Shown here piece after piece: positions 58,011 through 58,778 of a stretch of DNA of 64,000 nt. The notes beneath the pieces were generated by a model, which was given only the letters and a program-made list of their open reading frames with translations, was not told the origin of the DNA and made no database searches. Position numbers and translations under genes: made by a program. The stretch covers positions 124,001 to 188,000 of the IMG/VR virus record IMGVR_UViG_3300020172_001601. One strand, given 5' to 3'. Numbering within the stretch: position 1 is the first letter of the stretch; every line of letters begins with the position of its first letter.

Positions 58011-58083
58011 GTTCCCGTAGCTCAATTGGCAGAGCGGTGAACTCTAAATTTGCTGGTTGTGGGTTCGACTCCCACCGGGGACG
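58011..58083 (+). tRNA. amber suppressor tRNA (anticodon CTA), Trp-like body, G73
   Basis: GTTCCCG/CGGGGAC acceptor, GCTC-AATTGGCA-GAGC, GTGAA-CTCTAAA-TTTGC, GTGGG-TTCGACT-CCCAC; anticodon 58044-58046. Confidence 0.9.
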
Positions 58084-58097
58084 CTTGAGGTAAAAAC

Positions 58098-58700
58098 ATG
58101 AGCTTGGATACTTGGCAAAAGATCGACCGACTTGACCTTGAGGCAATCAAGGCCAAGTTGAAATCCAAAAAGGGTTGGTGGTGGAACCTACGCACTGACT
58201 TGGATGCCGTCGAACAAGAATACAAGCAATTCTTGTATCTAATTGCCACTAATCCAGGAGAAGTTGTCGTTCCTTGGAACGATAAGCTGGACGATCTGTG
58301 GCACGAGCATATTCTGGATACTGCTCGGTACGAAAAGGACTGCCAGGATATTTTCGGCAAGTTCATTCATCATAATCCGCATCTGGCGGTTGGTACTCGG
58401 CCTCAAGTTCAGGCTTATGAAAAGACCAAGGGAATGTACCGCACGGCCTTTAAGGACAAAGCGGCATCCCGATCCAGCACTGATCCGGGCTGTGGTACAT
58501 TTATGCCCATCGTATTTTGTGGCGGTGGTGACTTTGGCCATACTCATAGCGGTCACAGTCATAGCAGTCACACTCATAGCGATGACGCAGGCCATAGTGA
58601 CACTGGCGGGCATGGTGACAGCGGTGGAGCATCTTGTGGTGGCGGCTCATCCTGTGGCTCGTCCTGTGGCGGGGGTGGCTGTGGTGGCGGTGGTGACTAA
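58098..58700 (+). CDS. glycine-rich domain protein (GRDP/DUF1399-like) with His/Gly/Cys-rich tail
   Basis: EYKQFLYL..VVP..LDDLWHEHILDT.RY..DC..FG.FIHHNP; SCGGGSSCGSSCGGGGCGGG tail. Confidence 0.75.
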   Translation: MSLDTWQKIDRLDLEAIKAKLKSKKGWWWNLRTDLDAVEQEYKQFLYLIATNPGEVVVPWNDKLDDLWHEHILDTARYEKDCQDIFGKFIHHNPHLAVGTRPQVQAYEKTKGMYRTAFKDKAASRSSTDPGCGTFMPIVFCGGGDFGHTHSGHSHSSHTHSDDAGHSDTGGHGDSGGASCGGGSSCGSSCGGGGCGGGGD

Positions 58701-58707
58701 GTAACTA

Positions 58708-58778
58708 GCTCCGTTGGTATAGAGGTTGTGCCGGGAACTCTAAATTCCCAGAGACGGGTTCGAGTCCTGTACGGAGCA
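58708..58778 (+). tRNA. second amber suppressor tRNA (anticodon CTA), A73
   Basis: perfect GCTCCGT/ACGGAGC acceptor, GTAT/GTGC D stem, GGGAA-CTCTAAA-TTCCC, ACGGG-TTCGAGT-CCTGT; anticodon 58740-58742. Confidence 0.88.

What the first reader, a model, noticed from the sequence alone, without database searches (positions are those of the whole stretch)
58011..58778. Two distinct amber suppressor tRNAs (CUA) with different identity elements
Both fold into complete cloverleaves with the loop CT-CTA-AA. The first has a Trp-like body and G73. The second has a G1-C72/C2-G71/U3-A70 acceptor, a short variable loop and A73. Neither looks like tRNA-Pyl, since both keep the D-loop GG and the TTCGA T loop. 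A dedicated consensus promoter precedes the first. Two independent bodies make a sequencing error or a random mutation unlikely, and suggest UAG could be read as two different amino acids.
Basis: seen in the sequence. Interest (0 to 1): 0.85.

Follow-up and report, generated by a model that had tools for sequence, protein, structure and literature searches.

The report
Two amber suppressor tRNAs, huge phage
A roughly 390-kb freshwater phage carries two real but unrelated tRNA genes that read the UAG stop codon, yet the 45% of its genome I could sample, and the whole genome of a relative, still use UAG as an ordinary stop, so this is a twist on a known phage feature rather than a new genetic code.

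Summary
Two complete tRNA genes with anticodon CUA lie at 58011-58083 and 58708-58778, on either side of a 200-aa ORF. They sit downstream of a phage promoter motif that occurs 17 times in the window, so the promoter is not dedicated to them.

The window belongs to a huge phage with a T4-type capsid protein: IMG/VR contig of 340 kb, ENA contig of 390 kb.

- **tRNA1** belongs to a conserved phage family of CUA tRNAs. A related 595-kb phage, LR756511, has a copy in the corresponding genome neighbourhood. Cultured Aeromonas phage Akh-2 also has one. Ten of 21 stem pairs vary in a compensatory way while the anticodon never changes. Its body is more Lys-like than Trp-like; its discriminator is G73.
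- **tRNA2** has a Glu-type body with A73. I found no homologue anywhere.

No sign of UAG reassignment appeared. In the 176 kb I could reach (45% of the genome), and in all of LR756511, about 19-20% of genes end in TAG. Reading TAG as sense gains nothing.

The best reading is two working amber suppressors in a standard-code phage, giving partial read-through. Which amino acids they insert is unresolved. The structural genes of this phage could not be reached.

The parts
57937..57965 (+). Promoter-like site TTTACA-N14-TGGTAGAAT (-35, 17-nt spacer with TG, -10), one of 17 copies of this phage promoter motif in the window.
   Evidence: 10 of 12 consensus matches plus TG. (17 matches against 0 expected; 16 on the + strand). 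(15 exact TGGTAGAAT on the + strand and 1 on the - strand in 176 kb).
58011..58083 (+). tRNA1, anticodon CUA. G1-C72, U3-G70, G73, 5-nt variable loop, weak anticodon stem (two G-U pairs), no encoded CCA. Lys-type body.
   Evidence: (59.2 bits).
58098..58700 (+). 200-aa ORF between the two tRNAs, probably in the same transcript. Weak GRDP-like / UCP032817-like domain with a His/Gly/Cys-rich tail. Homologues in relatives are not flanked by tRNAs.
58708..58778 (+). tRNA2, anticodon CUA. G1-C72, C2-G71, U3-A70, A73, 4-nt variable loop, D stem with U11-G24 and U13-G22, no encoded CCA. Glu-type body.
   Evidence: 48.7 bits; cloverleaf is the minimum-energy fold, z -2.9.

Best explanation
These are two functional, phage-encoded amber suppressor tRNAs of separate origin, carried by a huge (about 390 kb) phage with a T4-type capsid protein that otherwise uses the standard code. 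They appear to be transcribed together with a 200-aa ORF from one copy of the phage's repeated sigma-70-like promoter. Host enzymes would then have to cut them out and add CCA. Once charged, they compete with release factor 1 at UAG, giving partial read-through rather than a reassigned codon. tRNA1 derives from a Lys-type body, one anticodon change from CUU, and has acquired G73. It is an old, conserved member of a family of phage CUA tRNAs. tRNA2 derives from a Glu-type body, one change from CUC, and is a lineage-specific addition. Shown: the genes, their folds, their different ancestries, the conservation of tRNA1, the shared promoter class, and the standard-code state of 45% of this genome and 100% of a collinear relative. 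Inferred: co-transcription, processing, charging, the degree of suppression, and the benefit to the phage. My preferred purpose is remodelling of translation termination during infection. The tRNAs sit in a genome with an RF1-type factor, RRF, PTH2, several aminoacyl-tRNA synthetases and at least 26 tRNAs. Read-through would burden host mRNAs and buffer phage amber mutations.
For: Real tRNAs. Same sequence in two assemblies. tRNA1 family: LR756511 is collinear with window 18-64 kb (37-59% aa identity), and its only CUA tRNA lies in the corresponding interval, between homologues of genes at window 47 kb and 63.7 kb. Across four phage CUA tRNAs, 83 of 84 stem cells pair and 10 of 21 pairs show compensatory change, while the anticodon CUA and its 3' neighbours (UCUAAA) never change. 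Cultured Aeromonas phage Akh-2 has an annotated tRNA-Sup-CTA of this type. Ancestry of tRNA1: an anticodon-free pattern from its D and T arms hits 59 Lys, 11 Thr and 2 Trp among 80 viral tRNAs. It is 77% identical to the phage's own Lys(CUU). A nearest-neighbour test calls it Lys, 6 of 7 votes. Ancestry of tRNA2: an anticodon-free pattern hits 122 of 122 tRNA-Glu in bacterial genomes. A73 plus a 4-nt variable loop occurs only in Glu in the reference set. Standard code: in 176 kb, 281 ORF-genes cover 90% and stops are TGA 125, TAA 101, TAG 55. Long in-frame continuations after + strand genes show no clear TAG-specific excess: 6 of 41 after TAG, 8 of 80 after TAA, 3 of 98 after TGA. In LR756511, TAG ends 189 of 971 genes, and TAG-as-sense lowers coverage from 0.897 to 0.890. 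Its head module is intact. Promoter class. Precedent for suppressor tRNAs in phages without recoding: PMC8504454, PMC12386605.
Against: About 214 kb (55%) of this genome, including all structural and lysis genes, could not be reached, so late-gene recoding is not excluded for this phage itself. About 20% of the phage's own genes end in TAG with no extra backup stops (p 0.41 and 0.48). Efficient suppression would therefore extend many phage proteins, which argues that suppression is weak, transient or offset. The phage also encodes an RF1-type factor that should recognise UAG, which works against suppression. tRNA2 has no homologue anywhere, so there is no evolutionary evidence that it functions. 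tRNA1's anticodon stem is weak, and the cloverleaf is not its minimum-energy fold. Isotype calls for phage tRNAs are unreliable: 17 of 24 correct in my control, including one false 'Glu' call.
Confidence: 0.55

Rival explanations
1. The tRNAs are the code-change machinery of a block-wise TAG-recoded phage (code-15 type). Late structural and lysis genes in the unsampled 55% of the genome would contain in-frame TAG and be translated only once the suppressors accumulate.
For: This is the best-documented role of phage CUA tRNAs. In that model the code-change genes themselves lie in standard-code regions, which fits what I see. No structural gene lies in the 176 kb sampled.
Against: TAG is not depleted as a terminator (19.6% of genes). 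The complete genome of LR756511, which carries the corresponding copy of tRNA1, shows no recoding, and its portal-to-capsid module is intact. About 80 related capsid genes in IMG/VR align full length without interruption. The phage encodes an RF1-type rather than an RF2-type factor.
Confidence: 0.15
2. One or both genes are neutral by-products. In a tRNA-rich genome, a duplicated tRNA picked up a position-36 anticodon mutation (CUU or CUC to CUA) and persists with little or no function. tRNA2 in particular may be a recent, poorly charged mutant.
For: Both anticodons are one change from Lys(CUU) and Glu(CUC), and the phage carries both of those tRNAs. tRNA2 has no homologues. The phage shows no adaptation of its TAG stops.
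Against: tRNA1 keeps its CUA anticodon across phages that share only 37-59% protein identity, with compensatory stem changes. tRNA2 retains all universal tRNA positions and a stable cloverleaf. It is only about 60% identical to the phage's Glu(CUC), so it is not a recent copy.
Confidence: 0.12
3. The suppressors are aimed mainly at the host or at competitors. Mass read-through of host UAG stops would weaken host or defence protein production, or help the phage cope with co-infecting recoded phages. The phage's own RF1-type factor, RRF and PTH2 would protect its own translation.
For: Authors have proposed this for 'silent' suppressor tRNAs in Zeta crAss-like phages. The phage carries termination and rescue factors.
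Against: Phage and host mRNAs share the same ribosomes, and the phage's own genes end in TAG as often as expected. No mechanism for selectivity is visible. The host is unknown.
Confidence: 0.15

Closest known systems
Single tRNA-Sup(CUA) genes in standard-code large phages: Ralstonia jumbo phage RsoM2USA (PMC8504454), Aeromonas phage Akh-2 (MK318083), uncultured huge phage LR756511
   Same: A CUA tRNA sits in a tRNA-rich lytic phage genome where TAG remains a common stop codon. The tRNAs of Akh-2 and LR756511 are 72-74% identical to tRNA1, and LR756511's copy lies in the corresponding genome interval.
   Different: Here there are two amber suppressors of unrelated bodies in one short operon. 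The second (Glu-type) has no counterpart in those phages.
Suppressor tRNAs of TAG-recoded (code 15) phages such as crAss-like and Lak phages (Borges et al., bioRxiv 10.1101/2021.08.26.457843; PMC9523058)
   Same: A phage-encoded CUA tRNA lies in a standard-code region and is expected to be charged by host enzymes.
   Different: Those genomes have in-frame TAG in structural and lysis genes, and some carry RF2. Here no in-frame TAG was found in 45% of the genome or in a complete relative, TAG ends about 20% of genes, and the release factor encoded is RF1-type.
'Non-functioning' suppressor tRNAs of Zeta crAss-like phages, e.g. Lera (PMC12386605)
   Same: A suppressor tRNA is kept over long divergence without any accumulation of the suppressed codon inside genes.
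   Different: In those phages TAG is avoided or is followed at once by TAA. Here TAG stops are frequent and have no extra backup stops. Lera's two suppressors read different stop codons; here both read UAG.
Laboratory amber suppressors of E. coli (supE, su+7 from tRNA-Trp, synthetic tRNA-Lys(CUA) and tRNA-Glu(CUA); Normanly et al. 1990, cited from my own knowledge, not read here)
   Same: Ordinary elongator bodies with a one-base anticodon change to CUA. They show that a Lys body with CUA can still insert Lys, while a Glu body with CUA is largely taken over by GlnRS.
   Different: Those arose in the laboratory in a cellular genome. These are natural, phage-borne, and come as a pair. The charging rules of the unknown host may differ.
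tRNA-Pyl
   Same: Only the CUA anticodon, which is why ARAGORN prints 'Pyl'.
   Different: tRNA-Pyl has a short D loop without G18G19, a 3-nt variable loop and an atypical T loop (own knowledge). Both tRNAs here have G18G19, GTTCGA T loops and 5- or 4-nt variable loops.

Membership tests
Phage-encoded amber suppressor tRNA (tRNA-Sup-CUA) | Complete canonical tRNA cloverleaf with the universal conserved positions | tested here: met
   Rfam RF00005 gives 59.2 and 48.7 bits, full length 1-71 of 71. ARAGORN finds both.
Phage-encoded amber suppressor tRNA (tRNA-Sup-CUA) | Anticodon CUA in a 7-nt loop with U33 and a purine at 37 | tested here: met
   Both loops read CUCUAAA.
Phage-encoded amber suppressor tRNA (tRNA-Sup-CUA) | Located in a phage genome | tested here: met
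   IMG/VR viral contig of 340 kb and ENA contig of 390 kb. T4-type gp23 fragment and gp32, at least 26 tRNAs, and collinearity with huge phage LR756511.
Phage-encoded amber suppressor tRNA (tRNA-Sup-CUA) | Anticodon and fold maintained by selection in relatives | tested here: inconclusive
   Met for tRNA1: 10 of 21 pairs compensatory with CUA invariant in 4 phages. No homologue of tRNA2 was found.
Phage-encoded amber suppressor tRNA (tRNA-Sup-CUA) | Actual read-through of UAG; mature, charged tRNA | not testable with these tools
   Needs a reporter assay, tRNA-seq and mass spectrometry.
TAG-recoded (code 15) phage | In-frame TAG inside conserved genes; higher coding density when TAG is read as sense | tested here: not met
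   Not met in the 176 kb sampled, nor in the complete relative LR756511.
TAG-recoded (code 15) phage | TAG rare or absent as a terminator | tested here: not met
   TAG ends 55 of 281 genes (19.6%).
TAG-recoded (code 15) phage | Accessory RF2, seen in some lineages | tested here: not met
   The only release-factor homologue found is RF1-type: prfA 210 bits against prfB 129 bits, with a PxT motif.
tRNA-Pyl | Short D loop lacking G18G19, 3-nt variable loop, non-canonical T loop | tested here: not met
   Both tRNAs have G18G19, GTTCGA T loops and variable loops of 5 and 4 nt.
tRNA-Lys lineage (origin of tRNA1) | Body similarity with the anticodon ignored | tested here: met
   59 of 80 viral tRNAs sharing its D and T arms are Lys. 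77% identity to the phage's Lys(CUU). Nearest-neighbour test gives Lys, 6 of 7 votes at a score where the controls were 11 of 12 correct.
tRNA-Lys lineage (origin of tRNA1) | Discriminator A73 and anticodon YUU | tested here: not met
   tRNA1 has G73. The Lys tRNAs listed show A73, as do most Lys tRNAs in the bacterial reference. The anticodon is CUA.
   G73 is present and is typical of Trp, Gln, Asn and Asp. Only 2 of 80 body matches are Trp.
tRNA-Glu lineage (origin of tRNA2) | Body similarity with the anticodon ignored; A73 with a 4-nt variable loop | tested here: met
   122 of 122 bacterial tRNAs matching its D and T-arm pattern are Glu. A73 plus a 4-nt variable loop occurs only in Glu in the reference. 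Nearest-neighbour test gives 7 of 7 Glu, but at a low score, and one phage Thr tRNA is wrongly called Glu.

The most novel reading that the evidence does not exclude
UAG is decoded ambiguously by design. tRNA2 would be charged with glutamate by the phage's own 302-aa GluRS catalytic core. That protein lacks the anticodon-binding domain and so cannot reject a CUA anticodon, which would make the two a natural orthogonal-like synthetase/suppressor pair. tRNA1 would be charged by a host enzyme with Lys or Gln. The phage's frameshift-controlled RF1-type factor would set how much UAG is read through at each stage of infection.
Probability: 0.1. Interest if true: 0.8.

Novelty: new variant of a known kind. 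Interest (0 to 1): 0.45.

Why it matters
Phage amber suppressor tRNAs are usually discussed as tools for stop-codon reassignment. This case joins the less understood class of suppressors kept in standard-code phages, and it adds two new points. First, tRNA1's CUA tRNA family is conserved in the corresponding genome region between huge phages that share only 37-59% protein identity. Long-term selection must therefore be acting without any recoding. Second, one phage carries two amber suppressors built on different isoacceptor bodies. If both are charged according to their bodies, UAG would be decoded ambiguously. The same genome holds an RF1-type factor behind a prfB-like frameshift site and a GluRS core with no anticodon-binding domain. 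That makes it a compact natural system for asking how phages retune termination. It is also a possible source of natural suppressor/synthetase pairs.

Tried and rejected
1. Reaching the structural genes of this phage. I walked the ENA contig with all 12 exact-protein look-ups plus viral scans, from 127.8 kb to 304.2 kb, and met no structural gene.
2. Reaching them through the capsid protein. I took the capsid gene of relative LR756511 as query. This contig was not among the best 80 of 388 relatives. Two capsid genes from the same metagenome belong to other phages. The capsid-fragment ORF used as a query found only itself and one 89% relative.
3. Synteny search for the ORF between the tRNAs, in viral and metagenome collections. 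I found only distant homologues with no flanking tRNAs.
4. blastn of the tRNAs against annotated phages. For tRNA1 the hits were of mixed isotype; for tRNA2 there were only three weak Cys hits. This was not usable for classification.
5. Nearest-neighbour isotype test with a bacteria-only reference. It was right for only about 4 of 12 of this phage's ordinary tRNAs, so I discarded it. A broader reference reached 17 of 24.
6. The E. coli 'augmented D helix' signature (U13-G22-A46 with a 4-nt variable loop). tRNA2 has it, but none of the 48 reference Glu tRNAs do, so it is not a general Glu marker and I did not use it.
7. Tests for adaptation to read-through. Backup stops after TAG showed no signal. 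TAG-linked same-frame gene pairs showed at most a slight, non-significant excess.
8. Arg identity for tRNA1, which was the top bacterial neighbour. I rejected it because the tRNA lacks A20 and C35, the main ArgRS elements (own knowledge).

Full report
**Observation**

ARAGORN finds three tRNA genes in the 64-kb window: Met(CAT) at 30670-30743, and two with anticodon CTA at 58011-58084 and 58708-58778. Rfam's tRNA model matches both CUA tRNAs end to end, at 59.2 and 48.7 bits against a threshold of 29.

Both carry the universal tRNA positions and the loop CUCUAAA. Neither encodes CCA. tRNA2 folds into the cloverleaf as its minimum-energy structure (z -2.9). tRNA1's anticodon stem has two G-U pairs, and the cloverleaf is not its minimum-energy fold. 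The two are 62% identical. ARAGORN's label 'Pyl' comes from the anticodon alone. D-loop GG, the GTTCGA T loops and variable loops of 5 and 4 nt rule out tRNA-Pyl.

**Where the window comes from**

Exact searches place both tRNAs on one IMG/VR contig, IMGVR_UViG_3300020172_001601 (340 kb). Protein look-ups place the window on an ENA contig of 390,142 bp, starting at about position 173,857. Overlaps between the two assemblies show no conflicts.

The genome is a huge phage:
- Genes are short and mostly on one strand.
- It has a fragment of a T4-type gp23 capsid gene, and gp32.
- The stretch I could read holds at least 26 tRNAs.
- It encodes IleRS, MetRS, an ArgRS-like protein, RRF, PTH2, Rsr/Ro60, ClpX, a sigma factor, RNA ligases and a PARP.

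No cultured relative matches at the DNA level.

**Transcription**

It is, however, one copy of a repeated phage promoter. TTTACA-N14-TGGTAGAAT, allowing one mismatch, occurs 17 times in the window against none expected, and 16 of the copies are on the + strand.

The order is promoter, tRNA1, a 200-aa ORF (58098-58700), then tRNA2, with gaps of 7 to 45 nt. That suggests a single transcript from which host enzymes release the tRNAs. This step is inferred.

**Ancestry of tRNA1**

- I built a pattern from its D arm and T arm, leaving the anticodon free. Among 80 other viral tRNAs it hits 59 Lys, 11 Thr, 3 Gly, 2 Trp, 4 singletons (His, Gln, Asn, Ile) and one further CUA tRNA. The Lys hits carry A73.
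- The closest tRNA within this phage is its own Lys(CUU), at 77% identity. It has the same D loop and T arm, and its anticodon loop differs only at position 36.
- A nearest-neighbour test with masked anticodons got 17 of 24 of this phage's ordinary tRNAs right. It calls tRNA1 Lys with 6 of 7 votes.
- Its discriminator is G73, which in the reference set is typical of Trp, Gln, Asn and Asp, not Lys.

The body is therefore Lys-type with a changed discriminator.

**Conservation of tRNA1**

The 595-kb uncultured phage LR756511 is collinear with window 18-64 kb, at 37-59% protein identity. Its only CUA tRNA lies in the corresponding interval. Similar CUA tRNAs occur on another IMG/VR contig (L202) and in cultured Aeromonas phage Akh-2, where it is annotated tRNA-Sup-CTA.

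Across these four sequences, 83 of 84 stem positions pair, and 10 of 21 pairs change on both sides while staying paired. The anticodon CUA and its 3' neighbours (UCUAAA) never change. That is the signature of a tRNA kept for reading UAG.

**Ancestry of tRNA2**

- An anticodon-free pattern from its D and T arms hits only tRNA-Glu in bacterial genomes: 122 of 122, made up of 114 UUC and 8 CUC.
- The combination of A73 and a 4-nt variable loop occurs only in Glu in the reference set.
- The nearest-neighbour test gives 7 of 7 Glu votes, but at a low score. The same test wrongly calls one of the phage's Thr tRNAs Glu. I therefore hold this call with moderate confidence.
- It is not a recent copy of the phage's own Glu(CUC), at about 60% identity.
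- I found no homologue. blastn against 50,697 phage records gave none. A Glu-body-plus-CUA pattern matches only this contig among 2.9 million viral contigs.

**Is UAG reassigned?**

I assembled 176 kb of this phage, ENA positions 127,766-304,169, which is 45% of the genome.
- Under the standard code, 281 ORF-genes cover 90% of it. Stops are TGA 125, TAA 101 and TAG 55, so TAG ends 19.6% of genes.
- Reading TAG as sense gives no local jump in coding density.
- Long in-frame continuations after + strand genes show no clear TAG-specific excess: 6 of 41 after TAG, 8 of 80 after TAA, 3 of 98 after TGA.
- Backup stops are no closer after TAG than after other stops (p 0.41).

As a proxy I read the whole of LR756511.
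- The standard code gives the best coverage (0.897).
- TAG ends 189 of 971 genes.
- TAG-joined ORF pairs are no more frequent per stop than TAA- or TGA-joined pairs.
- Its portal, protease, scaffold and capsid genes are intact.
- About 80 related capsid genes in IMG/VR align over their full length.

The lineage that carries the tRNA1 family is therefore not recoded. For this phage itself, late-gene recoding remains possible but unlikely, at about 0.15.

**What the tRNAs probably do**

The best-supported reading is two working amber suppressors in a standard-code phage, giving partial read-through.

Which amino acids they insert cannot be read from the sequence. The bodies point to Lys for tRNA1 and Glu for tRNA2. 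From E. coli work (my own knowledge, not tested here), the CUA anticodon itself draws GlnRS and LysRS, so Gln is a candidate for both. Dual decoding is possible but unproven.

The purpose is inferred. Published ideas for suppressors without recoding are an early step towards recoding and weakening of the host. Unlike the Zeta crAss-like cases, this phage neither avoids TAG nor backs it up. That suggests suppression is modest, or limited in time.

**Context that may matter**

- The window encodes an RF1-type release factor at 5914-6721. Twenty-two codons end at CTT TAA C. Domains 2-4, with PxT = PPT and GGQ, follow in the +1 frame, which has no start codon for 110 codons. Domain 1 is absent.
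- The same arrangement occurs in a 92%-identical relative, but with CTT TAG C.
- In LR756511 the site is CTT TAA C, followed by a second site, CTT TGA C. This looks like the prfB autoregulatory frameshift transplanted to an RF1-type gene.
- Outside the window, the phage has a 302-aa GluRS catalytic core with HIGH and KMSKR motifs but no anticodon-binding domain. It could in principle charge a Glu-type tRNA whatever its anticodon. This is speculation and forms the basis of the novel case.

**Verdict**

Phage amber suppressors, including ones in standard-code jumbo phages, are already known. What is new here is the pairing of two unrelated amber suppressors in one operon, one of them a Glu-type body not seen elsewhere. 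Also new is the evidence that the other belongs to a family conserved in position across unrecoded huge phages.

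Noticed in passing
window 5914-6721 (+); shift site CTT TAA C at 5977-5983; promoter motif at 5849-5877: An RF1-type release factor (PxT = PPT, GGQ, no domain 1) whose body lies in the +1 frame after a 22-codon leader ending in CTT TAA C. This looks like a prfB-style programmed +1 frameshift. It is conserved in a 92% relative, where the site reads CTT TAG C, and in LR756511, where it reads CTT TAA C and is followed by a second CTT TGA C.
   Followed up: partly
L013 4897-5805 (ENA about 151.4-152.3 kb, outside the window): A 302-aa GluRS catalytic core with HIGH and KMSKR motifs but no anticodon-binding domain. 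It scores higher against bacterial GluRS (273 bits) than against GluQRS (152 bits). It ends in TAG, GCA, TGA. No homologue in LR756511.
   Followed up: partly
L013 4509-4601 (outside the window): A 93-nt class-II tRNA (long variable arm, A73) with anticodon UAU, which pairs with the Ile codon AUA. The nearest-neighbour test places its body with Ser tRNAs. Rfam score 43 bits. The body type does not match the codon it would read.
   Followed up: no
window 962-1219 (+): An 85-aa ORF that is a fragment of a T4-type major capsid protein (about residues 55-110), 76-79% identical to the capsid proteins of related huge phages, followed by unrelated sequence. An 89%-identical copy of the ORF is present in a close relative (about 92% nucleotide identity).
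   Followed up: partly
window, 17 sites, e.g. 2050, 5849, 15055, 29386, 47044, 51391, 52579, 57937, 63550: A repeated phage promoter motif, TTTACA-N14-TGGTAGAAT, almost always on the + strand, with 0 expected by chance. It is probably read by host sigma-70 or by the phage's own sigma factor (window 31954-32901).
   Followed up: partly
window 3240-3680 and 3653-4963 (+): A divergent ArgRS-like protein (DALR domain plus part of the catalytic domain, 436 aa) preceded by an overlapping 146-aa ORF in another frame. This may be a split or frameshifted synthetase gene.
   Followed up: no
window 59831-60586 and 60590-61324 (+): An AlgH-like gene with a proline-rich tail ends in TAG, and one codon later the next gene starts in the same frame. 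Amber read-through would fuse them into one protein of about 497 aa. Such same-frame pairs are not significantly commoner after TAG than after other stops.
   Followed up: partly
window 36848-38539 and 45993-47003; L009 1033-1473: A PARP-like protein (WGR plus PARP catalytic domain), an ADP-ribosylglycohydrolase-like protein (named from my reading of its sequence, not a database hit) and a NADAR protein lie in the same region. The first two are conserved in LR756511 at 59% and 43% identity.
   Followed up: no
LR756511.1 341280-341632 (-): The related huge phage encodes a tmRNA (tag ANPEFAMAA) and 63 tRNAs. No tmRNA was seen in the 176 kb of this phage.
   Followed up: no
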